A DNA stretch of 64,000 nucleotides from Auanema rhodensis (GCA_964057225.1 OZ059895.1:13206001-13270000); one strand, 5' to 3'; positions 19,577 to 63,600 are shown, counted from the first letter of the stretch. Translations and numbers: made by a program. The notes: a model not told the origin generated them from the letters alone.

Positions 19577-19634
19577 TTGGAAAAAAAACAATAACGAGGA
19601 TAAGTATGTAAATCATTGAATATCAGGTATTTTC

Positions 19635-19753
19635 GCTTACGACCATACCACGTTGAAAGTACGCCATCCCGTCCGATCTGGCAAGTCAAGCAACGTTGGG
19701 CCCGGTTAGTACTTGGATCGGAGACGGCTTGGGAATCCCGGGTGCCGTAAGCT
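19635..19753 (+). rRNA. 5S rRNA (first right-arm copy)
   Basis: 119-nt consensus copy followed by TTT. Confidence 0.96.
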
Positions 19754-22700
19754 TTTCAAATTTTTTTAACGATCATACCACGTTGAAAGTACGCAATGCA
19801 GCTGATTTTCAATTTTATCTCTTCCGTAACAAATGTTTTCAATTTTCTAGCAGTTTTACTTAGATAGCTCAACCTAAGGCATCAAAATATCTTCAATCTT
19901 ATTTCTATATTACAGTTATAAACCAGTAGTTTATGAACCTTCATCTTAACTTTACTGTTTCTATCTATTTCCTTTTGAAACAAACATTGTTTTAACACTA
20001 TACAACTGTGAAACCTTTTTTAATTTATTGTATTTGGAGCTCATAAGATTTGATATCATCGAGGAATTTAGATGTAACGTAGAAAATTACATAACTAACA
20101 TGAAATTGGAAAAAAAACAATAACGAGGATAAGTATGTAAATCATTGAATATCAGGTATTTTCGCTTACGACCATACCACGTTGAAAGTACGCCATCCCG
20201 TCAGATCTGGCAAGTCAAGCAACGTTGGGCTCGGTTAGTACTTGGATCGGAGACGGCTTGGAAATCCCGGGTGCCGTAAGCTTTTCAATTTTTTTTAACG
20301 ATCATACCACGTTGAAAGTACGCAATGCAGCTGATTTTCAATTTTATCTCTTCCGTAACAAATGTTTTTAATTTTCCAGCAGTTTTACTTAGATAGCTAA
20401 ACCGAAGGCAGCGAATTATCTCTAATCTTATTCCTATATTACAGTTATAAACCAGTAGTTTATGAACCTTCATCTTAACTTTACTGTTTCTATCTATTTC
20501 CTATTGAAACAAACATTGTTTAAACACTATACAACTGTGAAACCTTTTTTAATTTATTGTATTTGGATCTCATAAGATTTGATATCATCGAGGGATTTAG
20601 ATGTAACGTAGAAAATTACATAACTAACATGAAATTGGAAAAAAAACCATAACGAGGATAAGTATGTAAATCATTGAATATCAGATATTTTCGCTTTCGA
20701 CCATACCACGTTGAAAGTACGCCATCCCGTCCGATCTGGCAAGTCAAGCAACGTTGGGCCCGGTTAGTACTTGGATCGGAGACGGCTTGGGAATCCCGGG
20801 TGCCGTAAGCTTTTCAATTTTTTTTAACGATCATACCACGTTGAAAGTACGCAATGCAGCTGATTTTCAATTTTATCTCTTCCGTAACAAATGTTTTTAA
20901 TTTTCTAGCAGTTTTACTTAGATAGCTCAACCCAAGGCATCAAAATATCTTCAATCTTATTTCTATATTACAGTTATAAACCAGTAGTTTATGAACCTTC
21001 ATCTTAACTTTACTGTTTCTATCTATTTCCTATTGAAACAAACATTGTTTTAACACTATACAACTGTGAAACCTTTTTTAATTTATTGTATTTGGAGCTC
21101 ATAAGATTTGATATCATCGAGGAATTTAGATGTAACGTAGAAAATTACATAACTAACATGAAATTGGAAAAAAAACAATAACGAGGATAAGTATGTAAAT
21201 CATTGAATATCAGATATTTTCGCTTACGACCATACCACGTTGAAAGTACGCCATCCCGTCCGATCTGGCAAGTCAAGCAACGTTGGGCCCGGTTAGTACT
21301 TGGATCGGAGACGGCTTGGGAATCCCGGGTGCCGTAAGCTTTTCAAATTTTTTTAACGATCATACCACGTTGAAAGTACGCAATGCAGCTGATTTTCAAT
21401 TTTATCTCTTCCGTAACAAATGTTTTCAATTTTCTAGCAGTTTTACTTAGATAGCTCAACCCAAGGCATCAAAATATCTTCAATCTTATTTCTATATTAC
21501 AGTTATAAACCAGTAGTTTATGAACCTTCATCTTAACTTTACTGTTTCTATCTATTTCCTTTTGAAACAAACATTGTTTTAACACTATACAACTGTGAAA
21601 CCTTTTTTAATTTATTGTATTTGGAGCTCATAAGATTTGATATCATCGAGGAATTTAGATGTAACGTAGAAAATTACATAACTAACATGAAATTGGAAAA
21701 AAAACAATAACGAGGATAAGTATGTAAATCATTGAATATCAGATATTTTCGCTTACGACCATACCACGTTGAAAGTACGCCATCCCGTCAGATCTGGCAA
21801 GTCAAGCAACGTTGGGCTCGGTTAGTACTTGGATCGGAGACGGCTTGGAAATCCCGGGTGCCGTAAGCTTTTCAATTTTTTTTAACGATCATACCACGTT
21901 GAAAGTACGCAATGCAGCTGATTTTCAATTTTATCTCTTCCGTAACAAATGTTTTTAATTTTCCAGCAGTTTTACTTAGATAGCTAAACCGAAGGCAGCG
22001 AATTATCTCTAATCTTATTCCTATATTACAGTTATAAACCAGTAGTTTATGAACCTTCATCTTAACTTTACTGTTTCTATCTATTTCCTATTGAAACAAA
22101 CATTGTTTAAACACTATACAACTGTGAAACCTTTTTTAATTTATTGTATTTGGATCTCATAAGATTTGATATCATCGAGGGATTTAGATGTAACGTAGAA
22201 AATTACATAACTAACATGAAATTGGAAAAAAAACCATAACGAGGATAAGTATGTAAATCATTGAATATCAGATATTTTCGCTTTCGACCATACCACGTTG
22301 AAAGTACGCCATCCCGTCCGATCTGGCAAGTCAAGCAACGTTGGGCCCGGTTAGTACTTGGATCGGAGACGGCTTGGGAATCCCGGGTGCCGTAAGCTTT
22401 TCAATTTTTTTTAACGATCATACCACGTTGAAAGTACGCAATGCAGCTGATTTTCAATTTTATCTCTTCCGTAACAAATGTTTTTAATTTTCTAGCAGTT
22501 TTACTTAGATAGCTCAACCCAAGGCATCAAAATATCTTCAATCTTATTTCTATATTACAGTTATAAACCAGTAGTTTATGAACCTTCATCTTAACTTTAC
22601 TGTTTCTATCTATTTCCTATTGAAACAAACATTGTTTTAACACTATACAACTGTGAAACCTTTTTTAATTTATTGTATTTGGAGCTCATAAGATTTGATA

Positions 22701-25700
22701 TCATCGAAGAATTTAGATGTAACGTAGAAAATTACATAACTAACATGAAATTGGAAAAAAAACAATAACGAGGATAAGTATGTAAATCATTGAATATCAG
22801 GTATTTTCGCTTACGACCATACCACGTTGAAAGTACGCCATCCCGTCCGATCTGGCAAGTCAAGCAACGTTGGGCCCGGTTAGTACTTGGATCGGAGACG
22901 GCTTGGGAATCCCGGGTGCCGTAAGCTTTTCAAATTTTTTTAACGATCATACCACGTTGAAAGTACGCAATGCAGCTGATTTTCAATTTTATCTCTTCCG
23001 TAACAAATGTTTTCAATTTTCTAGCAGTTTTACTTAGATAGCTCAACCCAAGGCATCAAAATATCTTCAATCTTATTTCTATATTACAGTTATAAACCAG
23101 TAGTTTATGAACCTTCATCTTAACTTTACTGTTTCTATCTATTTCCTTTTGAAACAAACATTGTTTTAACACTATACAACTGTGAAACCTTTTTTAATTT
23201 ATTGTATTTGGAGCTCATAAGATTTGATATCATCGAGGAATTTAGATGTAACGTAGAAAATTACATAACTAACATGAAATTGGAAAAAAAACAATAACGA
23301 GGATAAGTATGTAAATCATTGAATATCAGATATTTTCGCTTACGACCATACCACGTTGAAAGTACGCCATGCAGCTGATTTTTAATTTTATCTCTTCCGT
23401 AACAAATGTTTTCAATTTTCCAGCAGTTTTACTTAGATAGCTAAACCGAAGGCAGCGAATTATCTCTAATCTTATTCCTATATTACAGTTATAAACCAGT
23501 AGTTTATGAACCTTCATCTTAACTTTACTGTTTCTATCTATTTCCTATTGAAACAAACATTGTTTTAACACTATACAACTGTGAAACCTTTTTTAATTTA
23601 TTGTATTTGGAGCTCATAAGATTTGATATCATCGAGGAATTTAGATGTAACGTAGAAAATTACATAACTAACATGAAATTGGAAAAAAAACCATAACGAG
23701 GATAAGTATGTAAATCATTGAATATCAGATATTTCCGCTTACGACCATACCACGTTGAAAGTACGCCATCCCGTCCGATCTGGCAAGTCAAGCAACGTTG
23801 GGCCCGGTTAGTACTTGGATCGGAGACGGCTTGGGAATCCCGGGTGCCGTAAGCTTTTCAAATTTTTTTAACGATCATACCACGTTGAAAGTACGCCGTG
23901 CAGCTGATTTTCAATTTTATCTCTTCCGTAACAAATGTTTTTAATTTTCTAGCAGTTTTACTTAGATAGCTCAACCCAAGGCATCAAAATATCTTCAATC
24001 TTATTTCTATATTACAGTTATAAACCAGTAGTTTATGAACCTTCATCTTAACTTTACTGTTTCTATCTATTTCCTATTGAAACAAACATTGTTTTAACAC
24101 TATACAACTGTGAAACCTTTTTTAATTTATTGTATTTGGAGCTCATAAGATTTGATATCATCGAGGAATTTAGATGTAACGTAGAAAATTACATAACTAA
24201 CATGAAATTGGAAAAAAAACAATAAGGAGGATAAGTATGTAAATCATTGAATATCAGGTATTTTCGCTTACGACCATACCACGTTGAAAGTACGCCATCC
24301 TGTCCGATCTGGCAAGTCAAGCAACGTTGGGCCCGGTTAGTACTTGGATCGGAGACGGCTTGGGAATCCCGGGTGCCGTAAGCTTTTCAATTTTTTTTAA
24401 CGATCATACCACGTTGAAAGTACGCAATGCAGCTGATTTTCAATTTTATCTCTTCCGTAACAAATGTTTTTAATTTTCTAGCAGTTTTACTTAGATAGCT
24501 CAACCCAAGGCATCAAAATATCTTCAATCTTATTTCTATATTACAGTTATAAACCAGTAGTTTATGAACCTTCATCTTAACTTTACTGTTTCTATCTATT
24601 TCCTATTGAAACAAACATTGTTTTAACACTATACAACTGTGAAACCTTTTTTAATTTATTGTATTTGGAGCTCATAAGATTTGATATCATCGAGGAATTT
24701 AGATGTAACGTAGAAAATTACATAACTAACATGAAATTGGAAAAAAAAACAATAACGAGGATAAGTATGTAAATCATTGAATATCAGATATTTTCGCTTT
24801 CGACCATACCACGTTGAAAGTACGCCATCCCGTCCGATCTGGCAAGTCAAGCAACGTTGGGCCCGGTTAGTACTTGGATCGGAGACGGCTTGGGAATCCC
24901 GGGTGCCGTAAGCTTTTCAATTTTTTTTAACGATCATACCACGTTGAAAGTACGCAATGCAGCTGATTTTCAATTTTATCTCTTCCGTAACAAATGTTTT
25001 CAATTTTCTAGCAGTTTTACTTAGATAGCTCAACCCAAGGCATCAAAATATCTTCAATCTTATTTCTATATTACAGTTATAAACCAGTAGTTTATGAACC
25101 TTCATCTTAACTTTACTGTTTCTATCTATTTCCTTTTGAAACAAACATTGTTTTAACACTATACAACTGTGAAACCTTTTTTAATTTATTGTATTTGGAG
25201 CTCATAAGATTTGATATCATCGAGGAATTTAGATGTAACGTAGAAAATTACATAACTAACATGAAATTGGAAAAAAAACAATAACGAGGATAAGTATGTA
25301 AATCATTGAATATCAGATATTTTCGCTTACGACCATACCACGTTGAAAGTACGCCATGCAGCTGATTTTTAATTTTATCTCTTCCGTAACAAATGTTTTC
25401 AATTTTCCAGCAGTTTTACTTAGATAGCTAAACCGAAGGCAGCGAATTATCTCTAATCTTATTCCTATATTACAGTTATAAACCAGTAGTTTATGAACCT
25501 TCATCTTAACTTTACTGTTTCTATCTATTTCCTATTGAAACAAACATTGTTTTAACACTATACAACTGTGAAACCTTTTTTAATTTATTGTATTTGGAGC
25601 TCATAAGATTTGATATCATCGAGGAATTTAGATGTAACGTAGAAAATTACATAACTAACATGAAATTGGAAAAAAAACCATAACGAGGATAAGTATGTAA

Positions 25701-28700
25701 ATCATTGAATATCAGATATTTCCGCTTACGACCATACCACGTTGAAAGTACGCCATCCCGTCCGATCTGGCAAGTCAAGCAACGTTGGGCCCGGTTAGTA
25801 CTTGGATCGGAGACGGCTTGGGAATCCCGGGTGCCGTAAGCTTTTCAAATTTTTTTAACGATCATACCACGTTGAAAGTACGCCGTGCAGCTGATTTTCA
25901 ATTTTATCTCTTCCGTAACAAATGTTTTTAATTTTCTAGCAGTTTTACTTAGATAGCTCAACCCAAGGCATCAAAATATCTTCAATCTTATTTCTATATT
26001 ACAGTTATAAACCAGTAGTTTATGAACCTTCATCTTAACTTTACTGTTTCTATCTATTTCCTATTGAAACAAACATTGTTTTAACACTATACAACTGTGA
26101 AACCTTTTTTAATTTATTGTATTTGGAGCTCATAAGATTTGATATCATCGAGGAATTTAGATGTAACGTAGAAAATTACATAACTAACATGAAATTGGAA
26201 AAAAAACAATAAGGAGGATAAGTATGTAAATCATTGAATATCAGGTATTTTCGCTTACGACCATACCACGTTGAAAGTACGCCATCCTGTCCGATCTGGC
26301 AAGTCAAGCAACGTTGGGCCCGGTTAGTACTTGGATCGGAGACGGCTTGGGAATCCCGGGTGCCGTAAGCTTTTCAATTTTTTTTAACGATCATACCACG
26401 TTGAAAGTACGCAATGCAGCTGATTTTCAATTTTATCTCTTCCGTAACAAATGTTTTTAATTTTCTAGCAGTTTTACTTAGATAGCTCAACCCAAGGCAT
26501 CAAAATATCTTCAATCTTATTTCTATATTACAGTTATAAACCAGTAGTTTATGAACCTTCATCTTAACTTTACTGTTTCTATCTATTTCCTATTGAAACA
26601 AACATTGTTTTAACACTATACAACTGTGAAACCTTTTTTAATTTATTGTATTTGGAGCTCATAAGATTTGATATCATCGAGGAATTTAGATGTAACGTAG
26701 AAAATTACATAACTAACATGAAATTGGAAAAAAAAACAATAACGAGGATAAGTATGTAAATCATTGAATATCAGATATTTTCGCTTTCGACCATACCACG
26801 TTGAAAGTACGCCATCCCGTCCGATCTGGCAAGTCAAGCAACGTTGGGCCCGGTTAGTACTTGGATCGGAGACGGCTTGGGAATCCCGGGTGCCGTAAGC
26901 TTTTCAATTTTTTTTAACGATCATACCACGTTGAAAGTACGCAATGCAGCTGATTTTCAATTTTATCTCTTCCGTAACAAATGTTTTTAATTTTCTAGCA
27001 GTTTTACTTAGATAGCTCAACCCAAGGCATCAAAATATCTTCAATCTTATTTCTATATTACAGTTATAAACCAGTAGTTTATGAACCTTCATCTTAACTT
27101 TACTGTTTCTATCTATTTCCTATTGAAACAAACATTGTTTTAACACTATACAACTGTGAAACCTTTTTTAATTTATTGTATTTGGAGCTCATAAGATTTG
27201 ATATCATCGAGGAATTTAGATGTAACGTAGAAAATTACATAACTAACATGAAATTGGAAAAAAAACAATAACGAGGATAAGTATGTAAATCATTGAATAT
27301 CAGATATTTTCGCTTACGACCATACCACGTTGAAAGTACGCCATCCCGTCCGATCTGGCAAGTCAAGCAACGTTGGGCCCGGTTAGTACTTGGATCGGAG
27401 ACGGCTTGGGAATCCCGGGTGCCGTAAGCTTTTCAAATTTTTTTAACGATCATACCACGTTGAAAGTACGCCGTGCAGCTGATTTTCAATTTTATCTCTT
27501 CCGTAACAAATGTTTTTAATTTTCTAGCAGTTTTACTTAGATAGCTCAACCCAAGGCATCAAAATATCTTCAATCTTATTTCTATATTACAGTTATAAAC
27601 CAGTAGTTTATGAACCTTCATCTTAACTTTACTGTTTCTATCTATTTCCTATTGAAACAAACATTGTTTTAACACTATACAACTGTGAAACCTTTTTTAA
27701 TTTATTGTATTTGGAGCTCATAAGATTTGATATCATCGAGGAATTTAGATGTAACGTAGAAAATTACATAACTAACATGAAATTAGAAAAAAAACAATAA
27801 CGAGGATAAGTATGTAAATCATTGAATATCAGATATTTTCGCTTACGACCATACCACGTTGAAAGTACGCCATCCCGTCCGATCTGGCAAGTCAAGCAAC
27901 GTTGGGCCCGGTTAGTAGTTGGATCGGAGACGGCTTGGGAATCCCGGGTGCCGTAAGCTTTTCAAATTTTTTTAACGATCATACCACGTTGAAAGTACGC
28001 CGTGCAGCTGATTTTCAATTTTATCTCTTCCGTAACAAATGTTTTTAATTTTCTAGCAGTTTTACTTAGATAGCTCAACCCAAGGCATCAAAATATCTTC
28101 AATCTTATTTCTATATTACAGTTATAAACCAGTAGTTTATGAACCTTCATCTTAACTTTACTGTTTCTATCTATTTCCTATTGAAACAAACATTGTTTTA
28201 ACACTATACAACTGTGAAACCTTTTTTAATTTATTGTATTTGGTGCTCATAAGATTTGATATCATCGAGGAATTTAGATGTAACGTAGAAAATTACATAA
28301 CTAACATGAAATTAGAAAAAAAACAATAACGAGGATAAGTATGTAAATCATTGAATATCAGATATTTTCGCTTACGACCATACCACGTTGAAAGTACGCC
28401 ATCCCGTCCGATCTGGCAAGTCAAGCAACGTTGGGCCCGGTTAGTACTTGGATCGGAGACGGCTTGGGAATCCCGGGTGCCGTAAGCTTTTCAAATTTTT
28501 TTAACGATCATACCACGTTGAAAGTACGCCGTGCAGCTGATTTTCAATTTTATCTCTTCCGTAACAAATGTTTTTAATTTTCTAGCAGTTTTACTTAGAT
28601 AGCTCAACCCAAGGCATCAAAATATCTTCAATCTTATTTCTATATTACAGTTATAAACCAGTAGTTTATGAACCTTCATCTTAACTTTACTGTTTCTATC

Positions 28701-34700: not shown

Positions 34701-34718
34701 TGAATATCAGGTATTTTC

Positions 34719-34837
34719 GCTTACGACCATACCACGTTGAAAGTACGCCATCCTGTCCGATCTGGCAAGTCAAGCAACGTTGGGCCCGGTTAGTACTTGG
34801 ATCGGAGACGGCTTGGGAATCCCGGGTGCCGTAAGCT
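34719..34837 (+). rRNA. 5S rRNA (C36T variant, last copy before element A)
   Basis: 119-nt copy. Confidence 0.94.
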
Positions 34838-47513: not shown

Positions 47514-47581
47514 TAACATGAAATTGGAAAAAAAACAATAACGAGGATAAGTATGTAAATCATTGAATATCAGGTATTTTC

Positions 47582-49099: not shown

Positions 49100-49485
49100 C
49101 GTTCCATTTGATTGCCCTAGGGTTCCGACTAGGGTTTCAGATGGATTTTGTGCAAGGATTTCATTGTTCAACAAGTAGATAAATTAGCAACCGTTTTATT
49201 ATATAGAGAAAACTACAATAGGAAATGTTATAAACTACAAACAAGTAAAGTTAAAGTCTAAAACTACATGATAGAAGATCTCTCTTAGTGTGTTTTCTAC
49301 GGGTTTATATAGCAAACTATAGAATGTAAAAAGTGAATGAATTTGTATAAAAAGAATTACGTTCCACCTTATTCCGTGGAATCTTTTATAAAAAAACTTT
49401 CGAATTCTAGTTTCTTATTTTATTTGATTAAACTAAAGTCGGTTGACGTAGTCAACCGCCTTCTCTATAAGTTATGTATGGAACA
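49100..49485 (-). repeat. Element B 3' LTR
   Basis: Direct repeat of 60259-60644; one substitution seen (49249 A versus 60408 T). Confidence 0.96.
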
Positions 49486-49697
49486 TGCCTTATAGGAAAA
49501 AGTTAGCTGACCTCAGCTATAAGAAATTAGATTTCGTGTTTTTTTTTTTTTTTTTTTTTTTTTTGAAACAAAAAAAAAAAAAAATTGAAACAAGAATAGG
49601 AATAATAGAATAGGTAAGTGAATAATAGAGTGAAAAAAAATAAAAAAAAATAAAAATAAAATGTTTTATTGATTCATCACCTCTTTCTTAGCAGTTT

Positions 49698-50327
49698 TCA
49701 TCCTTCCTCCTCATTGATTTGTCCCATTTGAAAGTCGGTTGCTGTATGCTGCCCAGCGACGGTCCATGTGTGATAGAGACTGAGATCTGTCAGCAAATCT
49801 GTCGTCTGGTTGCATATCTTCTTTTTCATATCTTTCTGGTTCTGGGTGGTGGCGCCAGTTGCCATTAAAATCTTCAATGCTTGGCCAACTCGTTCTCCAG
49901 CTTTCCTTATTGACTGGTTTGCGGACTTGTTTAAACTCTCTTCTGTCCAACTCTTGTAGATTTCTTCTGCGGCCCATCTCGGGATTAGATCAGCGCTTCC
50001 TTCGTATTCTGGGATTGAATAGCCTAATTCTTGACGCAGTTTGCGGATGGTGAACTTGGTGCGGACGGTGGCTGACAACCAGTTCTTTGCCATTTTGGCC
50101 ATTTCGTCTTCTTCATGGTTACATAAACATTGTAACCTTTCCAGAGTTTCTATCAATAGAGTCACTCTGGATAGATTCTCCGAGAAGGACCGAAGAATCT
50201 TTAGTTTCTTGGGGTTGTCTTTCTCCAGCTCTTGTAGCTCAATTTGGAGTGAATGGATGTTGATCCATTTTTCCTTGATCATTTCGATGGGTGTCTCGCA
50301 GGGTAGAGGTGGAAGGTTGAGCGACAT
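49698..50327 (-). CDS. Accessory ORF2 of element B (209 aa from MSLNLPP; upstream in-frame ATG at 50402 crosses a poly-A tract)
   Basis: Same position as ORF2 of A; shared pattern TP..I...WI.+..L, L+E.LE, K.W, +R..LG, P.W, +GQ.L. Confidence 0.75.
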   Translation of the reverse strand: MSLNLPPLPCETPIEMIKEKWINIHSLQIELQELEKDNPKKLKILRSFSENLSRVTLLIETLERLQCLCNHEEDEMAKMAKNWLSATVRTKFTIRKLRQELGYSIPEYEGSADLIPRWAAEEIYKSWTEESLNKSANQSIRKAGERVGQALKILMATGATTQNQKDMKKKICNQTTDLLTDLSLYHTWTVAGQHTATDFQMGQINEEEG

Positions 50328-50543
50328 CTTGTCGAATTCGGAGGAATTTTTTTTTTTTTTTTTTTTTTTGCTTGAGGTGTTTTTGAGCTTATATAGCTCC
50401 ATGCAAAGCAGGTTTTTTTTTTTTTTTTTTTTTTTTCAGGTTACTGTAGGTGATGAATCGTTTTTTTTTTTTTTTTTTTTTTTTTTTGAACAGAGAAGGT
50501 AGAATTTTTAGAGAGATAGTGTGATTGATGACAAAAAAAAAAA

Positions 50544-56500: not shown

Positions 56501-59288
56501 GTTCAATGGCGATTTCAGTGGAAAGTCGAATCTCGGCTTCTGCGAGTGTGTGTAGGATAACCATGTTGATATCGGTGTAGTTGTGCCATAAGAGTCGATA
56601 TTTTAGTTTTGATGCTTCCAGTTGTAGGAATTTGATGAGCCCTATGTGTACGCTAGATGTTTTGAGGTAGTCTATAAGGTTATAGGTACTATCCAGTCTT
56701 TTACGATTTCGATATGTTTGGTACATTGGTAGTAATCCTGTAGAACTGTCTGTGAGGCGAAGTGATTGATAGATAGTGATGTTGAAGAATCTCGTAGGGT
56801 ACTCCTGTGGTGCTTTTCTCTTTTGACGTCGGGGTTTTAACTCGTTGATGGAAATGTACGTACCGCTGTCAGTTGAATAGATGTTCTTATTCATACATCT
56901 TGTAGCAATAGGGTCTGGCGTGTCGTCGTTGAGGATGAATGCTCCTTGTATTTCCGAGATTATAACAGTATCATTATTGATTAGTGCTTCGAATTTTCCT
57001 AAAGTTGTGTAATCACAATTTCGATGGTTATTGGGTGGGATCCATGTGATAACTGCGTTTGTGGTGTTGCATACACCTTGTTGTTTAGTGCATCCCTCAG
57101 TGTTGATAAACAAGTCGGAGATTATAGTGTCATCGTGTAGGCTAGTCATCATTCCTCTTTCTAATGTGAATCTTGATTTTGTTGTGCAAGAGGATGACCA
57201 GAACGATTTTGATTGAGTATTGGTAGGCATAGGAGTTTTGAATAGTCCTGGAGCTTCCCGATTGAGGTTGTTATCCGTGTGTCGTCTCTCTTGAATGGCT
57301 GTTTTGCATTCTTGTGGAGTGGCTGGTTCTATTCGGAGTAATGTGAGGTTGTTTTCCCTGATGAAGAATAAGTCGTAGGCGCAAGCTTTATAGATTTCCT
57401 TGGAGCATTTCCATGCTTCCCATTCTTTGTAATTCATATTTTCTGCAAATAGTTCCACTGTTTTTATCTTGACTCCGTCTTTGTGTGCATAGTCTGAGCA
57501 GGTTGTTGGTCGAGGTGGTTCGAGGAAAATACCTCCTCGTTTGCCGATGCAGAGTTGATAGGTGTTGTCTGCCTGACAGGGTATCAAAGATAAAGCGATG
57601 ACGGATAAGAATAGCGGTATGAACGGAAGTGTCTTCCTTGTTTTTCCTGTTTCTTTCTCCACTTTGTTAACGTGAAAACGAACGCTAGGGCTTCTGGTAC
57701 GATCTCTGTACCTGTTATGTTGTCCATGCGAAGAGCTGCGATTTCTTTGTTGGAATCCGCGATCGTGATAGTTTCCGCGGTTGTATCGGTCGTTTCCTCT
57801 GTGCTCATGTCGATCGTTTCCTCTGTTATCATATCGGTCGTTTCTTCTGTTATCGTATCGATCGTTGTATCTATCGTACCGTTGAGGACTACGATAACTG
57901 TTGTATCCTCGTTGGTATCCATTGTTTCTGTTATCTTGTCTGAAGTTGGGACGGTTATTTTGTCGGTCGTCCTGGTATCTTGGTGGGCGGTATCCTCCTC
58001 TTCTTTGATTCCATTGTTCCTGTGGGCGTTGTGGTCTTGATTGATTTCCATAAAACGTTCTTGGTTGGTGTGTTTGTGATTCGTCATGGGTTTTGTCCTG
58101 TTGTGAGGTTCTCATGTGGTTTATGAGACCGTTATTGATCTCTAATTGTTCCACGTTTTTGATCAAGTTGTTGATATGTAGCGACGGATCTTCGTCGGCT
58201 TCTACTGTTTCGGCGATAGTTACAGCTGCATCGAAGGTTATAGGGCTGCGGTTATTGACGTGTGTTCTTAAAGTCTTTCTTAGTCCTCCTAAGAACGAAA
58301 CACGTAGTATTCTTTCGTCAGCTGTTGAGTCCATGTTGCATGATTCGTAAGCGAGATTTCTGCAACGTTGCGCGAAATTTTGTACCGTTTCGTTTTCTCC
58401 TTGTTTCAAATGGGTGAGTTTCGTAAATGCAGCATCCCTCTTTTCTGGAGGTTGTAATTTCTCCGATAGTAGACGTTTGACGTGGTTCCATCCTTGGCGT
58501 AAGTCTTCTGCTGGTATAGTTCGCAGAGCTTCGGCGGCTCTGTCCGTTCCAAGAAGTAGATAAAGATGGGAAAGTCTCTCCGCAATAGGGACTTGAAGTG
58601 CGTCAAAATATCCTTCTAGTCTTTGCATGTAGAGATTGAATGGTACGGATCCATCATAAAGCGTAGGTTTATGATGGCGAATAGAAACATTGTTGGCTCT
58701 CGCGATAGGAGGATTATCTTGCTCCATCTGATTTGCCATTTGAGGGCGACTTCTCTGCTCTGTAACATTCGAAGTCAAATTTATGTTATTGTCTGACGAA
58801 GAAGAGACAGGAGACAGAGAGTGCCCATGCAAAGATTGATCAGTGGAAGAGGGGGAATTTCTAGGAATAGGAGAAGTGAGGATTTCCGCGTTTTCGGTTT
58901 GAATAGGACGTTGAGGAGAAGTGTGATTTGGAAGATAAGTGTTAGTGCCGGTGTCAATGACTGTTTTTGGAGAGTGAGAAGAGCGTTTGGGCGTGGATTT
59001 ACTAGATGTTGCTTTATTTTTATTCAAACTTATCGCATGCCTAGTAGTTTTGATAGCAGTTGTATAAAGTTTCTTAGCAGTTAGCGGTGTGCCCGGAATG
59101 GGGGGTAATTTCTTTGATTTAGCGTTAGTTTTCGGATGTTTCGCATCTGGTCGAAATGCATCCGGTGGTCCTCTTTTTCTTTGGTTTCTATGCAGTGCTG
59201 CTTCCACTGTCTGGGTATTCTCTGAGCTATTTGTAGTGTTTTGGGTATTATTTCCCGGCGGAGGGTTTTGATTCGCTGTGTCAGCCAT
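50544..59288 (-). CDS. Gag-Env-Pol polyprotein (2914 aa)
   Basis: Gag KPTLYDG...LKQGENETVQNF; signal peptide ~57626-57570; furin-type RRQKR ~56831-56817; Thr-rich tract; gB-like helix; TM ~54822-54757; DTG 54446-54438; YLDD 53138-53127; RNase H; HHCC, DDE and GPY integrase motifs. Confidence 0.96.
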   Translation of the reverse strand: MADTANQNPPPGNNTQNTTNSSENTQTVEAALHRNQRKRGPPDAFRPDAKHPKTNAKSKKLPPIPGTPLTAKKLYTTAIKTTRHAISLNKNKATSSKSTPKRSSHSPKTVIDTGTNTYLPNHTSPQRPIQTENAEILTSPIPRNSPSSTDQSLHGHSLSPVSSSSDNNINLTSNVTEQRSRPQMANQMEQDNPPIARANNVSIRHHKPTLYDGSVPFNLYMQRLEGYFDALQVPIAERLSHLYLLLGTDRAAEALRTIPAEDLRQGWNHVKRLLSEKLQPPEKRDAAFTKLTHLKQGENETVQNFAQRCRNLAYESCNMDSTADERILRVSFLGGLRKTLRTHVNNRSPITFDAAVTIAETVEADEDPSLHINNLIKNVEQLEINNGLINHMRTSQQDKTHDESQTHQPRTFYGNQSRPQRPQEQWNQRRGGYRPPRYQDDRQNNRPNFRQDNRNNGYQRGYNSYRSPQRYDRYNDRYDNRRNDRYDNRGNDRHEHRGNDRYNRGNYHDRGFQQRNRSSSHGQHNRYRDRTRSPSVRFHVNKVEKETGKTRKTLPFIPLFLSVIALSLIPCQADNTYQLCIGKRGGIFLEPPRPTTCSDYAHKDGVKIKTVELFAENMNYKEWEAWKCSKEIYKACAYDLFFIRENNLTLLRIEPATPQECKTAIQERRHTDNNLNREAPGLFKTPMPTNTQSKSFWSSSCTTKSRFTLERGMMTSLHDDTIISDLFINTEGCTKQQGVCNTTNAVITWIPPNNHRNCDYTTLGKFEALINNDTVIISEIQGAFILNDDTPDPIATRCMNKNIYSTDSGTYISINELKPRRQKRKAPQEYPTRFFNITIYQSLRLTDSSTGLLPMYQTYRNRKRLDSTYNLIDYLKTSSVHIGLIKFLQLEASKLKYRLLWHNYTDINMVILHTLAEAEIRLSTEIAIEHLLPSEITAKLSKQITISDFATRLLNHKGDYLERARQIALEIAQTPTTLATGETIPSLEEYLYQLYPPRMTKLPRSRTDTQVYTQIDEIQKFLEYLAQNNRLSRISKEEREAENKKWADLTRQSNSSAITFPNYTLIFNGHAQNYGFPKTLPTARPITEEDSLLFQQTYLQLIESPGASPTTTTTTTTTTTTTTRTPATTVDPTTTTYRTPLPQFTTTPRRYHYYQSTTTPVTPPPRLLTTTNRREPPRTIPTTRITTKRATTTQPVEKIKSHTGSQAHLNFLRTRADIIQKYDDQLRQQDTRSHLQYSTSKLEEEILQAFQITKKSVCRMQNKQLLTWWAILQINPTIGIRTMLRRQDISAKFVGEHLIYVMPCTPVQITHVYSDHKRDDKCYLETPVDTEHHGKLFITPGSRDLTPYAHIIACDMATSDPYKINNQWMKDNSTLNVTHFSFSDELTSVKIDHIKFNNSNIFSNLTESTFPMALAISYGSSLASLQATLPGKLKPVFKQSGFSNLNPIGIIGGTVGTTLMLADNISNNAEKQITNFFEYVGESITAWILRTLAIIGGILVAIGLITATIWALKIYACTTRIPINQITFKEEEEEPRRENKEIELQQLQPLNKSQQNKFCSRISRYDPDAPLSDNDFLAYLPRYAMKESRINYIGGSRLPFVPLSIHNQIFTALWDTGASISYMKESTFQQLPAATMVGEKTTAIVANKSRFSFLGYTRLPIVIGKTEIEHKILISANNHCPAPILLGIDFIEALSKIGINTSLRPLQNSLLVGDTIVPLAQDYSPWTENHTIAHVVSLETKQFYPGETRSLTLEVDDPASYAQAFIRSSQRIGKMTFAPTTFTPTGYGVQIFATNISPETIKIKTNQGIGTAYAIPKDIKEQKGQYVPPEARWEEQLPYFPDDFIKDLDVTNTIFTQLERQELKKIVLRNKEAFLNEDRNIGLFKGPVEHNIPIIPGKFPSFQITYRIPLTQQEEVEKQVEEMLEQGIIEPSISITTSPVILVKKKDKTYRFVTDFRALNAITLKQIYVISNIQDILDLAAGACIFTNFDLVSGFFQIPLRKEDRHLTAFTTTSGTYQYCRMPMGLCGAPHTFQNAVRYLQQHVRCKLFVYLDDLLLISESTTQHLQDIKEVLRVAIELGFKIKLKKCTFGQREVKFLGFIVGYEGIKPDPQKIKAIRDYPRPKSTTGVRAFMGVVNYFRRFIKNAAGIASPLYDLTKKDKAFTWGDKEEKSFQHLKKVLCQAPVLQAPRAKRPYVVESDGSIIAVGAVLLQSADGQEPLHPIAFASRKLNKAERNYPPIEIEALALTFAVHQFRTYILGAPIKIITDHRPLTSLMTRKDLIGRLAKFQIVLQEYDIEIIYRPGRLNSVCDALSRYFEDEINEAKERKKKTKESPTHQISTITTITDLRTIQEETEWIMETKEKIQNKTAGRQLTDRYIVQNNILYAKPKTAFQTPRAVLPNDPTITTAIIDKFHKDPLLGAHLGINKTHDSILRRYTWTGMQEDITNYVNRCLQCAKRKNNPHEATVEPMRNFPTVSQPWERVHMDILGPLPRTQNGNRYISSIQDAFSKWIIATPLLRQTSEEIITAIKKNLFFVFGPPKRIITDNGSNFVSHEFKTMCEQLGSEHHTTMPYYKNANGQVERLHRTLEEALTSYVNTEQDNWDDILPKIVFTLNRLPNATTRTPPYDCIFGQAARLPIDHNLDTPAPTLKPTGDLHEKIYERITRNNEKMKKKYDEAHKIQERELYVDNRALVKRAKPTNKLQAVSDGPYLIKEINKNNVILADDDGNRIRAHKNNIRYFPPDDNNIEESEHGRNDAGSAIYSNRSRHDQVNTRAQNNGQATPPISDSDSDNEDEFYEQSRPIITTKETITPQEDTLERQQESYQSESGLDTADKTSTNKEENNQFQQLVDKIGEETRQELYEERQKELPTIKRWSSALKLALGLEDKNPITPPKPFHVPIRYNSVIQVFEF

Positions 59289-59594
59289 TTTTGTTGGTTT
59301 CCTGGAAGGAAATTATTAACCAACGAAGACTGAGCTTATATATACAAACGTAAGAAACAATATGGGGTTGGTATGCGCGACTCCTGTTTCTGTCAGGGGG
59401 CCAGCCTGCAGCGGGTCTCTAGTCGGAGAATAGCCTGGTCAGGTTCATACACGAGTCCGCAACTACGTGTGACCTTAGCAAAGGACCGGGTTCTTATCTC
59501 ACGAAGAGGCATGAGATGCGAGACAGTGGTCTGTGTATTGTGCCTTTTCAGTCATGGACAAGATCAGGTACACAGGCTTCTCGAACTCATTTTT

Positions 59595-59806
59595 CCAGAC
59601 TTCTCGTGCCTAAGCGAACCCGCAGAAGACGTTCCCTTTTAACGTTGCTTCTGCTCCCCTGGGCTCTGCTAGGTGGGACCACTTAACTTCAAAAAAATAT
59701 TACGTTTTGTAATTCTCATATAGGACCGAAAAAGGGTTAATTTCAAATGAATGCGCGTCTTATATCAAAAGTGTACGCCTCCGCACGATGTCCCGAGAAA
59801 GTCTGG
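59595..59806 (-). ncRNA. Structured cis-acting RNA domain in the element B leader
   Basis: CCAGACTT-CTCG/CGAGAAGTCTGG, GGGAC+CACTT/AAGTGGTCCC, GAGCCC/GGGTTC, GCAGAAG/CTTCTGC. Confidence 0.7.
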
Positions 59807-60240
59807 TATTGTTTCTCACGGGCTTGAATAAAATAGAATAGTTTATGGTTTATGAGTAGGAAGTTTTACGAAGAGAAAAAAAAATAGATGATTCAAGAAT
59901 ATGTTTTGGTATTTTTTTTTTTTTTTTTTTGAAAATGTCTTATAAATGATAATGAATAAATGTTTTTAAAGTATTTTATAAATAGATTATGACAATAAAT
60001 GTTTTGATTTGTTTGTTTCAAAAGAGTTTTCATGCATTATATGCTTTTAATATATATGAAATAAAAGAATGAAGTAAAGATAAAATTCGGGTAACATTTA
60101 GGAGATAAAATTGACAATTTTAGAAATAGAAGTTTGAATATTATATAAAGTTTTGATATGAAGGATAAAAGATTTTGAATACAAAAAGGATTTCGAAAAG
60201 TAGCGGAAATGGTCCATAGAGATCCGTCCGTTATAGACGG

Positions 60241-60258
60241 ATCTCGGTGGAACCTCCA
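60241..60258 (-). promoter_or_regulatory. Primer-binding site, tRNA-Gln
   Basis: TGGAGGTTCCACCGAGAT on the minus strand, directly abutting the 5' LTR. Confidence 0.9.
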
Positions 60259-60644
60259 CGTTCCATTTGATTGCCCTAGGGTTCCGACTAGGGTTTCAGA
60301 TGGATTTTGTGCAAGGATTTCATTGTTCAACAAGTAGATAAATTAGCAACCGTTTTATTATATAGAGAAAACTACAATAGGAAATGTTATAAACTACAAA
60401 CAAGTAATGTTAAAGTCTAAAACTACATGATAGAAGATCTCTCTTAGTGTGTTTTCTACGGGTTTATATAGCAAACTATAGAATGTAAAAAGTGAATGAA
60501 TTTGTATAAAAAGAATTACGTTCCACCTTATTCCGTGGAATCTTTTATAAAAAAACTTTCGAATTCTAGTTTCTTATTTTATTTGATTAAACTAAAGTCG
60601 GTTGACGTAGTCAACCGCCTTCTCTATAAGTTATGTATGGAACA
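60259..60644 (-). repeat. Element B 5' LTR
   Basis: TGTTCCAT...ATGGAACG on the minus strand; TATATAAACCC and AATAAA present. Confidence 0.96.
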
Positions 60645-63600
60645 ATAACTAACATGAAATTGGAAAAAAAACAATAACGAGGATAAGTATGTAAATCATT
60701 GAATATCAGATATTTTCGCTTACGACCATACCACGTTGAAAGTACGCCATCCCGTCCGATCTGGCAAGTCAAGCAACGTTGGGCCCGGTTAGTACTTGGA
60801 TCGGAGACGGCTTGGGAATCCCGGGTGCCGTAAGCTTTTCAATTTTTTTTAACGATCATACCACGTTGAAAGTACGCAATGCAGCTGATTTTCAATTTTA
60901 TCTCTTCCGTAACAAATGTTTTCAATTTTCTAGCAGTTTTACTTAGATAGCTCAACCCAAGGCATCAAAATATCTTCAATCTTATTTCTATATTACAGTT
61001 ATAAACCAGTAGTTTATGAACCTTCATCTTAACTTTACTGTTTCTATCTATTTCCTATTGAAACAAACATTGTTTTAACACTATACAACTGTGAAACCTT
61101 TTTTAATTTATTGTATTTGGTGCTCATAAGATTTGATATCATCGAGGAATTTAGATGTAACGTAGAAAATTACATAACTAACATGAAATTAGAAAAAAAA
61201 CAATAACGAGGATAAGTATGTAAATCATTGAATATCAGATATTTTCGCTTACGACCATACCACGTTGAAAGTACGCCATCCCGTCCGATCTGGCAAGTCA
61301 AGCAACGTTGGGCCCGGTTAGTACTTGGATCGGAGACGGCTTGGGAATCCCGGGTGCCGTAAGCTTTTCAAATTTTTTTAACGATCATACCACGTTGAAA
61401 GTACGCCGTGCAGCTGATTTTCAATTTTATCTCTTCCGTAACAAATGTTTTTAATTTTCTAGCAGTTTTACTTAGATAGCTCAACCCAAGGCATCAAAAT
61501 ATCTTCAATCTTATTTCTATATTACAGTTATAAACCAGTAGTTTATGAACCTTCATCTTAACTTTACTGTTTCTATCTATTTCCTATTGAAACAAACATT
61601 GTTTTAACACTATACAACTGTGAAACCTTTTTTAATTTATTGTATTTGGTGCTCATAAGATTTGATATCATCGAGGAATTTAGATGTAACGTAGAAAATT
61701 ACATAACTAACATGAAATTGGAAAAAAAACAATAACGAGGATAAGTATGTAAATCATTGAATATCAGGTATTTTCGCTTACGACCATACCACGTTGAAAG
61801 TACGCCATCCTGTCCGATCTGGCAAGTCAAGCAACGTTGGGCCCGGTTAGTACTTGGATCGGAGACGGCTTGGGAATCCCGGGTGCCGTAAGCTTTTCAA
61901 TTTTTTTTAACGATCATACCACGTTGAAAGTACGCAATGCAGCTGATTTTCAATTTTATCTCTTCCGTAACAAATGTTTTTAATTCTCTAGCAGTTTTAC
62001 TTAGATAGCTCAACCCAAGGCATCAAAATATCTTCAATCTTATTTCTATATTACAGTTATAAACCAGTAGTTTATGAACCTTCATCTTAACTTTACTGTT
62101 TCTATCTATTTCCTATTGAAACAAACATTGTTTTAACACTATACAACTGTGAAACCTTTTTTAATTTATTGTATTTGGAGCTCATAAGATTTGATATCAT
62201 CGAGGAATTTAGATGTAACGTAGAAAATTACATAACTAACATGAAATTGGAAAAAAAACAATAACGAGGATAAGTATGTAAATCATTGAATATCAGGTAT
62301 TTTCGCTTACGACCATACCACGTTGAAAGAACGCCATCCCGTCCGATCTGGAAAGTCAAGCAACGTTGGGCCCGGTTAGTACTTGGATCGGAGACGGCTT
62401 GGGAATCCCGGGTGCCGTAAGCTTTTCAATTTTTTTTAACGATCATACCACGTTGAAAGTACGCAATGCAGCTGATTTTCAATTTTATCTCTTCCGTAAC
62501 AAATGTTTTTAATTTTCTAGCAGTTTTACTTAGATAGCTCAACCCAAGGCATCAAAATATCTTCAATCTTATTTCTATATTACAGTTATAAACCAGTAGT
62601 TTATGAACCTTCATCTTAACTTTACTGTTTCTATCTATTTCCTATTGAAACAAACATTGTTTTAACACTATACAACTGTGAAACCTTTTTTAATTTATTG
62701 TATTTGGAGCTCATAAGATTTGATATCATCGAGGAATTTAGATGTAACGTAGAAAATTACATAACTAACATGAAATTGGAAAAAAAACAATAACGAGGAT
62801 AAGTATGTAAATCATTGAATATCAGGTATTTTCGCTTACGACCATACCACGTTGAAAGAACGCCATCCCGTCCGATCTGGAAAGTCAAGCAACGTTGGGC
62901 CCGGTTAGTACTTGGATCGGAGACGGCTTGGGAATCCCGGGTGCCGTAAGCTTTTCAATTTTTTTTAACGATCATACCACGTTGAAAGTACGCAATGCAG
63001 CTGATTTTCAATTTTATCTCTTCCGTAACAAATGTTTTTAATTTTCTAGCAGTTTTACTTAGATAGCTCAACCCAAGGCATCAAAATATCTTCAATCTTA
63101 TTTCTATATTACAGTTATAAACCAGTAGTTTATGAACCTTCATCTTAACTTTACTGTTTCTATCTATTTCCTATTGAAACAAACATTGTTTTAACACTAT
63201 ACAACTGTGAAACCTTTTTTAATTTATTGTATTTGGAGCTCATAAGATTTGATATCATCGAGGAATTTAGATGTAACGTAGAAAATTACATAACTAACAT
63301 GAAATTGGAAAAAAAACAATAACGAGGATAAGTATGTAAATCATTGAATATCAGGTATTTTCGCTTACGACCATACCACGTTGAAAGTACGCCATCCCGT
63401 CCGATCTGGCAAGTCAAGCAACGTTGGGCCCGGTTAGTACTTGGATCGGAGACGGCTTGGGAATCCCGGGTGCCGTAAGCTTTTCAATTTTTTTTAACGA
63501 TCATACCACGTTGAAAGTACGCAATGCAGCTGATTTTCAATTTTATCTCTTCCGTAACAAATGTTTTTAATTTTCTAGCAGTTTTACTTAGATAGCTCAA

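What the first reader, a model, noticed from the sequence alone, without database searches (positions are those of the whole stretch)
19577..60717. Three independent insertions 58-73 bp upstream of 5S starts: probable Pol III/5S-targeted integration
Seen: element A TSD at -68..-65 of the 5S at 47582; element B TSD at -73..-70 of the 5S at 60718; solo LTR right junction at -58 of the 5S at 19635. These are three distinct LTR sequences, in both orientations, with different TSD sequences, all within ~15 bp of a 529-bp unit, and the adjacent 5S gene stays intact. Known: yeast Ty1/Ty3 and Dictyostelium DGLT-A/TRE elements integrate next to Pol III genes through protein contacts with TFIIIB/C or Pol III. 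Inference: position-specific rather than sequence-specific targeting just outside the TFIIIB footprint, here in an animal env-bearing element. Only three sites, so the statistics are thin.
Basis: partly seen in the sequence, partly recalled or inferred. Interest (0 to 1): 0.9.

Follow-up and report, generated by a model that had tools for sequence, protein, structure and literature searches.

The report
Worm retrovirus-like elements beside 5S genes
Three related retrovirus-like elements in a nematode-type 5S rRNA gene array all sit in one 19-bp spot, 55-73 bp upstream of a 5S gene, which hints (from three cases only) that this animal element lineage aims its integration at these genes, as some yeast and amoeba elements do.

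Summary
The window is a 5S rDNA array (529-bp unit, 64 genes) interrupted by only three foreign blocks. Element A is 12.3 kb, with 425-bp identical LTRs and TSD TAAC at -68..-65. Element B is 11.5 kb, inverted, with 386-bp LTRs differing at one base and TSD ATAA at -73..-70. The third block is a 339-bp solo LTR whose right edge abuts -58. The neighbouring 5S genes are intact.

Three points need correcting:
- The three LTRs are sub-families of one lineage, not unrelated.
- The solo LTR has no TSD. It lies on an array inversion breakpoint.
- Its left edge marks a fourth site elsewhere, at +11 of a 5S-like fragment.

Clustering beats a uniform model (p about 0.002; 0.01-0.016 if the fourth site counts). 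The cut sites share no motif.

A and B are uninterrupted gag-env(gB type)-pol Ty3/gypsy elements of the known nematode class. Their integrase is closest to Ty3 but shows no Ty3-type chromodomain. The C-terminal tail has no relatives and is predicted disordered.

Position-specific targeting upstream of 5S genes is the best reading. A Pol III-factor tether is plausible but untested.

The parts
1..19237 (-). 5S rDNA array, minus-strand arm: 26 genes in 529-bp units, 13 gene-less 399-bp units, and one more 399-type unit truncated at the solo LTR
   Evidence: Rfam 5S hits; unit tiling; TRF
19238..19576 (+). Solo LTR (339 bp, termini TGTT...AACG) of a third sub-family. It lies on the array inversion breakpoint and has no TSD.
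   Evidence: Non-array block; junctions; alignment to the A and B LTRs
19577..19634 (+). 58 bp of intact upstream spacer between the solo LTR and the 5S gene at 19635. It includes an A8 tract (-54..-47) and a TATA-like stretch (-30..-22).
   Evidence: That the TATA-like stretch marks the TFIIIB position is inference.
19577..35183 (+). 5S rDNA array, plus-strand arm up to element A
35180..35183 (+). Left copy of element A's TSD (TAAC)
35184..47513 (+). Element A: full-length LTR element, 12,330 bp, same orientation as the 5S genes
35184..35608 (+). Element A 5' LTR (425 bp), identical to the 3' LTR
35609..35628 (+). Element A primer-binding site (starts TGG). 19 of 20 bases are shared with B.
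36853..46050 (+). Element A single uninterrupted ORF, 3065 aa: Gag-Env-PR-RT-RNaseH-IN-tail. No stops or frameshifts.
37675..37944 (+). Gag capsid-like region (PF03732, aa 275-364; E 1.8e-4, 22.1 bits, just below the 24.1-bit cut-off)
38566..41628 (+). Env: signal-like segment, class III (gB/Monjiviricetes type) fusion glycoprotein ectodomain with 14 Cys and a Thr-rich block, then a TM anchor at aa 1563-1592
   Evidence: Pfam PF00606 in A; PF24664 at 70 bits in B; A/B alignment; hydrophobicity scan
41875..42168 (+). Aspartic protease
42913..43971 (+). Reverse transcriptase and RNase H
44290..45360 (+). Integrase: HHCC zinc domain, catalytic core and SH3-like C-terminal domain. The closest solved relative is Ty3 integrase (7q5b).
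45361..46047 (+). C-terminal tail (aa 2837-3065): acidic, mostly predicted disordered, with two helices. No relatives were found for its last 165 aa or so.
47089..47513 (+). Element A 3' LTR
47514..47517 (+). Right copy of element A's TSD (TAAC), at -68..-65 of the 5S gene at 47582
47582..47700 (+). Intact 5S gene downstream of element A
   Evidence: 107.5 bits
49096..49099 (+). Left copy of element B's TSD (ATAA)
49100..60644 (-). Element B: full-length LTR element, 11,545 bp, opposite orientation to the 5S genes
49100..49485 (-). Element B 3' LTR (386 bp)
50544..59288 (-). Element B single uninterrupted ORF, 2914 aa, same layout as A: Gag aa 248-337, Env about aa 553-1512, PR 1599-1694, RT 1943-2102, RNaseH 2165-2295, IN from aa 2404. 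It is 53% identical to A overall.
60239..60258 (-). Element B primer-binding site
60259..60644 (-). Element B 5' LTR; one mismatch to the 3' LTR
60645..60648 (+). Right copy of element B's TSD (ATAA), at -73..-70 of the 5S gene at 60718
60718..60836 (+). Intact 5S gene downstream of element B
   Evidence: 107.5 bits

Best explanation
Three sub-families of one lineage of nematode gag-env-pol Ty3/gypsy endogenous retrovirus-like elements integrated recently and independently into the 5S array. Each integration was integrase-mediated and made a 4-bp staggered cut. Their site choice is set by position relative to the 5S gene, in a zone 55-73 bp upstream of +1, not by the sequence that is cut.

The most likely mechanism (inferred, not shown) is that the intasome is guided by something assembled on or organised by the 5S promoter-proximal region. 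That could be the Pol III pre-initiation complex (TFIIIB on the TATA-like stretch near -30, recruited by TFIIIA/TFIIIC) or the DNA edge it creates. Strand transfer would then fall just upstream of the occupied DNA and leave the gene intact.

Shown: the anatomy, the independence of the events, the clustering, and the lack of a cut-site motif. Inferred: what the guide is. If it is a protein contact, it does not use a Ty3-type chromodomain.
For: - Only three foreign blocks interrupt 64 kb of array.
- A and B are simple insertions: 529 + 4 bp are restored across each.
- The elements lie in both orientations, and the TSD words differ (TAAC, ATAA/TTAT, putative TTGG). Those words occur 10, 10 and 5 times per unit.
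- The clustering gives p = 0.0024-0.0043.
- LTR pairs differ at 0 of 425 and 1 of 386 bases, and both ORFs are uninterrupted. The copies are young, so their pattern reflects integration bias.
- No element sequence is similar to the array, so homology-driven insertion is excluded.
- A and B are only 53% identical in protein, and about 73% in DNA within pol only, yet they use the same zone. The property therefore belongs to the lineage.
- The integrase's nearest solved relative is Ty3 integrase, from the TFIIIB-bound intasome structure.
- Comparable distances are on record for D. lacteum DGLT-A, at 55-65 bp upstream of tRNA genes (PMC5006619).
Against: - There are only three sites.
- The solo LTR's left junction records a fourth site, at +11..+14 of a 5S-like fragment and outside the zone. 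Counting it, p rises to 0.01-0.016.
- The window holds no tRNA, U6 or other Pol III gene. Pol III machinery cannot be separated from a 5S-specific factor, the spacer's A8 tract and DNA shape, or phased nucleosomes.
- The 15 gene-less 399-bp units carry the same upstream sequence and no insertion, but this is uninformative: the expected probability is about 0.5.
- No chromodomain or other known tether module was found by Pfam, by exhaustive HMMER or in the AlphaFold model.
- The related Cer1 family sits at varied non-5S sites such as plg-1 (PMC3315495, PMC10309623).
Confidence: 0.5

Rival explanations
1. Local DNA or chromatin preference, with no contact to Pol III factors. The integrase favours a structural feature of this stretch of spacer: the flank of the rigid A8 tract at -54..-47, or a fixed location on a nucleosome phased by the tandem array. 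The same zone in every unit is then a hotspot. On this reading the elements are specialists for the 5S array, not for Pol III genes.
For: All sites lie immediately upstream of the A8 tract. The solo LTR and A sites are 10 bp apart (-58 and -68). The gene-less 399-bp units and the intact units share this sequence, so the window cannot exclude the idea. No tether domain was detected.
Against: B's site is 5 bp out of phase with A's. The target DNA shows no unusual predicted structure (z = 0.12). The rest of the spacer is equally AT-rich, at 65-90%. Such preferences usually give broad rather than 19-bp-wide distributions.
Confidence: 0.3
2. Chance clustering in a safe haven. The elements insert more or less anywhere and persist in the 5S array because single units are dispensable. 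On this reading, three sites within 19 bp is a coincidence noticed after the fact.
For: There are only three or four events. One junction does lie elsewhere. The finding was selected post hoc by a reader scanning for oddities.
Against: The arc statistic is position-agnostic and gives p = 0.002-0.016. The copies are too young (0 and 1 LTR differences) for selection to have shaped the pattern. Three copies from three sub-families within 64 kb is itself unexpected for nematode elements of this kind.
Confidence: 0.15
3. Assembly artefact. The junctions, above all the inversion at the solo LTR, would come from misjoined long reads in a repetitive array.
For: Head-to-head arrays joined at a repeat are a typical place for misassembly. 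The solo LTR lacks a TSD.
Against: A and B have perfect 4-bp TSDs and restore exactly one unit. Both edges of the solo LTR coincide to the base with the LTR termini shared by A and B. That points to integrase-made junctions, even if two loci were later joined by recombination or by the assembler.
Confidence: 0.05

Closest known systems
Non-canonical nematode endogenous retroviruses / gB-type 'errantiviruses' with GAG-ENV-POL order (Sacco et al. 2022, as cited in PMC13524379; eLife 2026)
   Same: Ty3/gypsy pol. A herpesvirus-gB/Monjiviricetes-type class III fusion glycoprotein lies between gag and pol. LTRs and a tRNA-type PBS are present, and the copies are young and intact. The nearest relatives, at about 50% identity in RT-IN and with the same Pfam layout, are in Caenorhabditis and Ancylostoma.
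   Different: The held eLife paper never uses the terms 'integration site' or 'target site', so no site preference is on record there. Here gag, env and pol form one continuous ORF of about 3000 aa. I could not read the Sacco paper, which is not held.
Ty3 of Saccharomyces cerevisiae (TFIIIB-tethered integration; PDB 7q5b, PMC8632968)
   Same: Ty3/gypsy integrase. It is the best sequence and fold match to the integrase here. It inserts next to Pol III genes in either orientation without destroying them.
   Different: Ty3 cuts at -6/-2 of the transcription start, makes a 5-bp TSD, and uses a C-terminal domain plus a vestigial chromodomain to touch TBP and Brf1. Here the distance is -55..-73, the TSD is 4 bp, and no second beta-barrel follows the C-terminal domain. 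Any tether would lie on the far side of TFIIIB.
Dictyostelid DGLT-A, especially D. lacteum DGLT-A.1/2 (PMC5006619)
   Same: Ty3/gypsy element with a single ORF and no chromodomain. It has a position-specific window upstream of Pol III genes, at 55-65 bp in D. lacteum, close to the 55-73 bp seen here.
   Different: It lives in amoebae, targets tRNA genes and has no env. Its mechanism is also unknown. The relationship is probably convergent; I did not test phylogeny.
Ty1 (integrase-AC40/Pol III contact) and TRE5-A (ORF1-TFIIIB) (PMC7459421, PMC5911963)
   Same: Upstream-of-Pol III 'safe haven' targeting that includes 5S genes. TRE5-A inserts 37-41 bp upstream of the extrachromosomal 5S genes.
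   Different: Ty1 is a copia-type element with a 1-kb nucleosome-periodic window. TRE5-A is a non-LTR element.
Cer1 of Caenorhabditis (PMC3315495, PMC10309623)
   Same: Nematode Ty3/gypsy element with one long ORF, identical LTRs, and a divergent region after the integrase.
   Different: Cer1 has no gB-type env and a tRNA-Pro PBS signature; the PBS here differs. Its known insertion sites are not at 5S genes (plg-1 and others). Its post-integrase region encodes CERV from a spliced mRNA. Whether the tail here does the same is untested.
Sequence-specific rDNA/5S elements (R2; Mutsu in 5S; PMC10946416 table)
   Same: They reside in ribosomal or 5S arrays.
   Different: Those are non-LTR elements with an endonuclease that cuts one fixed sequence. 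Here three different positions and TSDs are used by an integrase.

Membership tests
Nematode GAG-ENV-POL Ty3/gypsy ERV-like elements (gB-type) | LTR pair with target-site duplication and a PBS next to the 5' LTR | tested here: met
   425-bp and 386-bp LTR pairs, 4-bp TSDs, and a PBS starting TGG directly after the LTR.
Nematode GAG-ENV-POL Ty3/gypsy ERV-like elements (gB-type) | Pol domain order PR-RT-RNaseH-IN (Ty3/gypsy) | tested here: met
   both elements.
Nematode GAG-ENV-POL Ty3/gypsy ERV-like elements (gB-type) | Class III (gB-type) fusion glycoprotein placed between gag and pol | tested here: met
   PF24664 at 70.3 bits in B, above the 27-bit cut-off. A has only a sub-threshold PF00606 hit, but is 64-66% identical to B across that stretch. 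A signal-like segment, a TM anchor and 14 Cys are present in both. No PDB match was found by sequence.
Nematode GAG-ENV-POL Ty3/gypsy ERV-like elements (gB-type) | Nearest relatives are nematode elements with the same layout | tested here: met
   Caenorhabditis species and Ancylostoma ceylanicum, 45-52% identity in RT-IN, carrying PF24664/PF00606.
Ty3-type TFIIIB-tethered integration | Insertion within a few bp of the Pol III transcription start | tested here: not met
   The sites are at -55..-73, against -6/-2 for Ty3.
Ty3-type TFIIIB-tethered integration | 5-bp TSD | tested here: not met
   The TSDs are 4 bp in A and B.
Ty3-type TFIIIB-tethered integration | Integrase C-terminal domain followed by a (vestigial) chromodomain that contacts Brf1 | tested here: not met
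   There is no Pfam chromo hit. The sequence match to Ty3 stops at the C-terminal domain. The AlphaFold model has one beta-barrel followed by disorder and two helices, and Foldseek aligns only about 180 residues. Caveat: the tail has low confidence.
Ty3-type TFIIIB-tethered integration | Physical contact of the integrase with TBP/Brf1 | not testable with these tools
   No host Pol III factor sequences are available, and no complex prediction tool.
Pol III-gene-targeting retroelements in general (Ty1, Ty3, DGLT-A, TRE) | Copies lie at a characteristic distance from several kinds of Pol III genes (tRNA, 5S, U6) genome-wide | not tested
The window contains only 5S genes.
Pol III-gene-targeting retroelements in general (Ty1, Ty3, DGLT-A, TRE) | Narrow, position-defined window next to the gene, in either orientation, with the gene left intact | tested here: inconclusive
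   Three of three (or three of four) junctions lie within 19 bp, both orientations occur and the genes are intact. But n = 3.
Sequence-specific rDNA-inserting elements (R2/Mutsu type) | One fixed cleavage sequence; non-LTR element with its own endonuclease | tested here: not met
   There are three different cut positions and TSDs, and the elements are LTR/integrase elements.
Cer1 family | tRNA-Pro PBS signature adjacent to the 5' LTR (as defined in PMC10309623) | tested here: not met
   The PBS at 35609-35628 and 60239-60258 differs from that signature from its fourth base onward.

The most novel reading that the evidence does not exclude
This would be the first animal retrovirus-like (env-bearing) LTR lineage whose integrase is tethered to the Pol III transcription complex. 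It would place new copies at a distance not seen in yeast, 55-73 bp upstream of 5S genes and possibly other Pol III genes. It would do so through an integrase surface unlike the Ty3 chromodomain, making it a convergent 'safe-haven' strategy in Metazoa.
Probability: 0.3. Interest if true: 0.8.

Novelty: new variant of a known kind. Interest (0 to 1): 0.62.

Why it matters
Targeting of Pol III genes is the textbook example of a retroelement choosing harmless landing sites, but the review tables I could read list it only for yeasts and dictyostelid amoebae (PMC5911963, PMC5006619). A nematode lineage doing the same would have several consequences:
- It would show that the strategy also evolved in animals. 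This lineage is young, apparently intact and carries a viral fusion glycoprotein.
- It would give a second, independent geometry, upstream of the presumed TFIIIB position rather than at the transcription start, for asking how integrases read transcription complexes.
- It would explain how such elements persist in compact nematode genomes.
- It would bear on how 5S arrays are reshaped, since here an array inversion coincides with an LTR.

If the pattern instead turns out to be a preference for spacer shape or chromatin, it is still a clean natural example of a hotspot in a tandem array.

Tried and rejected
- **Homology-driven insertion:** rejected. No array-like sequence lies inside the elements.
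- **Amplification of one insertion by unequal crossing-over:** rejected. The three LTRs and the A and B interiors differ.
- **Cut-site sequence specificity:** rejected as the sole cause. The TSD words differ and each recurs 5-10 times per unit.
- **Unusual single-strand structure at the target:** none found (z = 0.12).
- **Small ORFs after pol (46216-46899 and 49698-50402):** no Pfam hit, and not conserved between A and B. I treat them as spurious.
- **Known domain in the integrase tail:** none found by Pfam at E up to 10. An exhaustive HMMER search gave 11,712 hits, but all of the 150 listed cover only the integrase core end and C-terminal domain. The AlphaFold and Foldseek results agree.
- **Env against PDB by sequence:** no hit.
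- **Literature:** seven searches ran. None found a report of a nematode or other animal LTR element targeted to 5S or Pol III genes. The Sacco et al. 2022 paper is not held, and the eLife supplement is not held.
- **Primer tRNA for the PBS:** not identified. There is no tRNA gene in the window, and I type no sequences from memory.
- **Gene-less 399-bp units as a test of 'sequence versus active gene':** uninformative. With 64 intact and 15 gene-less units, the chance that three insertions all fall next to intact genes is about 0.5.

Full report
**What is in the window.** Rfam finds 64 5S rRNA genes and nothing else at gathering threshold. Of these, 26 lie on the minus strand between 314 and 17252. 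The other 38 lie on the plus strand from 19635 to the window end. Gene spacing is 529 bp.

Tiling one reference unit (19635-20163) over the window covers everything except three blocks: 19238-19576, 35184-47509 and 49101-60644. The array also holds 15 gene-less 399-bp units, plus one truncated at 19237. In these units the gene body is deleted between the first 33 nt of the 5S gene and a 29-nt 5S-like fragment that follows every terminator.

**The junctions.**
- **Element A.** It has identical 425-bp LTRs at 35184-35608 and 47089-47513. It is flanked by TAAC at 35180-35183 and 47514-47517, so the right TSD copy occupies -68..-65 of the 5S gene at 47582.
- **Element B.** It is inverted relative to A. 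Its 386-bp LTRs at 49100-49485 and 60259-60644 differ at one base. It is flanked by ATAA at 49096-49099 and 60645-60648, which is -73..-70 of the gene at 60718.
- In both cases the two halves of the split unit add up to 529 + 4 bp, so these are clean integrase-type insertions.
- **Solo LTR.** It is 339 bp long. It ends precisely at the LTR terminus shared with A and B and meets array DNA at 19577, which is -58 of the gene at 19635.

All three adjacent genes score 107.5 bits, the top class in the window.

**Corrections to the observation.**
- The solo LTR is not a simple insertion. Its left flank is the inverted arm of the array and ends at unit position 141, which is +11 of the 5S-like fragment or of a 399-type hybrid start. 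There is no TSD.
- Both edges of the solo LTR are exact LTR termini, so both were most likely made by integrase. The simplest account is that two oppositely oriented copies of this sub-family, or two ends joined non-concertedly, were followed by LTR-LTR recombination that inverted part of the array. A misjoin by the assembler between two such loci cannot be excluded.
- Either way the window records a fourth site, with putative TSD at +11..+14 of a 5S-like sequence. That site lies outside the zone.
- The three LTRs are related. They share about 10 nt at the 5' end and about 9 nt at the 3' end (TGTT...AACG). The solo LTR is about 82% identical to parts of B's LTR. They are three sub-families of one lineage.

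**Is it more than chance?** For sites drawn uniformly on a circle of 529 bp, the probability that all three TSD centres fall within 15 bp is 0.0024. On the 410-bp spacer alone it is 0.0043. If the fourth site is counted and three of four are required, the values are 0.0096 and 0.016.

- The statistic does not depend on where the cluster lies.
- The 4-mers at the cut sites differ. In element orientation they are TAAC, TTAT, TTGG and GTAT.
- The TSD words occur 10, 10 and 5 times per unit.
- The target DNA has no unusual predicted structure.
- The LTR pairs differ at 0 and 1 positions, so the copies are young and their distribution should reflect insertion bias more than selection.

**What the elements are.** A carries one uninterrupted ORF of 3065 aa (36853-46050). 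B carries one of 2914 aa (50544-59288, minus strand). Neither has a stop or frameshift.

Pfam gives the following order:
1. Gag capsid-like region.
2. A herpesvirus-gB / Monjiviricetes-type class III fusion glycoprotein. PF24664 scores 70.3 bits in B, above its cut-off. In A there is only a sub-threshold PF00606 hit.
3. Aspartic protease.
4. RT.
5. RNase H.
6. Integrase zinc domain and catalytic core.

The glycoprotein part begins with a hydrophobic signal-like segment and ends in a TM anchor (A aa 1563-1592, B aa 1484-1512). Each ectodomain has 14 Cys and a Thr-rich block.

A and B are 53% identical overall. Identity is 78-93% in most of RT, RNase H and the integrase core, and only 14-34% beyond about aa 2800.

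The nearest database proteins (45-52% identity in RT-IN, same Pfam layout) come from Caenorhabditis species and Ancylostoma ceylanicum. The host is therefore most likely a rhabditid nematode whose own proteins are not in the collection.

This class is already described. Nematode 'errantiviruses' carry only gB-type Env, in the order GAG-ENV-POL (PMC13524379, citing Sacco et al. 2022). That paper does not use the terms 'integration site' or 'target site'.

**The integrase and its tail.**
- The best solved relative of the integrase is the Ty3 polyprotein in the TFIIIB-bound intasome, 7q5b (E 8e-28). The match covers the zinc domain, the catalytic core and the C-terminal domain (A aa 2480-2814), but not the Ty3 chromodomain.
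- In Ty3, the C-terminal domain touches TBP and a vestigial chromodomain touches Brf1. Cuts are placed at -6/-2 and give a 5-bp TSD (PMC8632968).
- Here no chromo or other domain is found in the tails by Pfam, even at E up to 10.
- An exhaustive HMMER search with A aa 2657-3065 gives 11,712 hits. In all of the 150 best hits listed, the best-scoring match ends by about residue 240 of the query, so the last 165 aa or so have no detectable relatives.
- An AlphaFold model built with a 37-sequence alignment is confident for the end of the core, the linker helix and one SH3-like barrel. After that it shows disorder, two helices and disorder again.
- Foldseek again puts Ty3 7q5b first, over about 180 aligned columns only.
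- The tails are acidic.
- In Cer1, the region after the integrase encodes part of CERV, a separate protein made from a spliced mRNA and needed for genomic RNA export (PMC10309623). The tail here may likewise not be part of the mature integrase. That is a lead, not a result.

**Mechanism.** The best-supported reading is position-specific integration into a narrow zone upstream of 5S genes, by a property shared across this lineage.

- The upstream DNA has a TATA-like stretch at -30..-22 and an A8 tract at -54..-47. Placing TFIIIB over the former is inference from general Pol III biology. On that inference, the sites lie just beyond its upstream edge.
- A protein tether to the Pol III pre-initiation complex is the most economical mechanism. 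Precedents are Ty3-TFIIIB, Ty1-AC40 and TRE5-A ORF1-TFIIIB (PMC8632968, PMC7459421, PMC5911963). D. lacteum DGLT-A inserts at a nearly identical distance from tRNA genes, 55-65 bp (PMC5006619).
- The window cannot distinguish this from a preference for the DNA next to the A-tract, or for a phased nucleosome. It contains no other Pol III gene class.
- The gene-less 399-bp units share the upstream sequence and carry no insertion, which is uninformative for three events.
- Cer1, a more distant nematode relative with a different PBS, is not associated with 5S genes.

**Novelty.**
- The elements themselves are new members of a known class.
- A Pol III-gene-directed (or 5S-directed) site preference for an animal LTR or ERV-like lineage appears in none of the papers I could search.
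- It is also absent from the review tables of Pol III-targeting and rDNA-associated elements. PMC5911963 lists only yeasts and dictyostelids. PMC10946416 lists only non-LTR Mutsu and unspecified fragments for 5S.
- If confirmed, it would be a new variant of a known kind of targeting. It would have a different distance and TSD length from Ty3 and would lack the Ty3 chromodomain.

That census is the decisive test and is referred.
The conservation line printed by the aligner was used only to describe the shared LTR termini.
- Slip: at the very start, in my own reasoning, I wrote out from memory what I took to be the 5S rRNA sequences of two model organisms, in order to guess the host. I stopped, sent those sequences to no tool, and rest nothing on them. 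The host assignment rests alone.

Noticed in passing
window 9429-9827, 11415-14606, 17253-19237, 23338-23736, 25325-25723: There are 15 gene-less 399-bp units, plus one truncated at the solo LTR. Each is a 529-bp unit that has lost 130 bp between the first 33 nt of the 5S gene and the 29-nt 5S-like fragment after the terminator. They keep the whole upstream region but lack the internal control region.
   Followed up: partly
window 19769-19794 and the same place in every unit (unit positions 135-163): A copy, about 96% identical, of 5S positions 5-33 sits directly after each gene's T-run terminator. It is the likely recombination partner that generated the 399-bp units.
   Followed up: partly
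window 19237/19238 and 19576/19577: The 5S array switches strand exactly at the two edges of the solo LTR, giving head-to-head arms. This is an LTR-associated inversion, or else a misjoin between two LTR-bearing loci. The reciprocal breakpoint is outside the window.
   Followed up: partly
window 19635-22927 and 23737-27430: The array has higher-order periodicity. Rfam scores of successive genes repeat as 107.5/98.9/103.1 every 3 units (1587 bp). Further on they repeat as 107.5/103.3/103.1 plus one 399-bp unit, every 1987 bp. This implies recent multi-unit duplications.
   Followed up: no
window 38566-41628 (A) and about 54753-57632 (B, minus strand): The Env part lies inside the same ORF as gag and pol. 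It has an internal signal-like segment, a conserved run of basic residues in the ectodomain of both elements, a Thr-rich mucin-like block and a TM anchor. How Env is released from the polyprotein (cleavage or splicing) is not evident from the sequence.
   Followed up: partly
window 45361-46047 (A) and 50547-51040 (B, minus strand): The tail after the integrase is acidic, mostly predicted disordered, and has one long helix. A and B are only 14-34% identical there, and its last 165 aa or so have no detectable relatives. It may be analogous to the CERV region of Cer1.
   Followed up: partly
window 35184-35608, 49100-49485, 19238-19576: The LTRs end in ...AACG rather than the usual ...CA. All three share an inverted-repeat motif about 28-46 nt from the 5' end (alignment A1).
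   Followed up: no
window 35609-35628 and 60239-60258: A and B share a 20-nt PBS, with one difference, that abuts the LTR with no spacer. It differs from the tRNA-Pro signature of Cer1. The primer tRNA was not identified.
   Followed up: no
window 49534-49596 and 50347-50490: Short (24-34 nt) repeated stretches lie in the untranslated region between B's ORF end and its 3' LTR.
   Followed up: no
window 35629-36852 and 59289-60238: The leaders between the PBS and the first ATG of the polyprotein are unusually long, about 1.2 kb in A and about 0.95 kb in B. BLASTN found almost no similarity between them.
   Followed up: no
protein P0006: One Caenorhabditis auriculariae relative is annotated as a fusion with EF-Tu/eEF1A-type GTPase domains. 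That copy probably lies beside a protein-coding gene, which is anecdotal evidence that not all relatives sit in 5S arrays.
   Followed up: no
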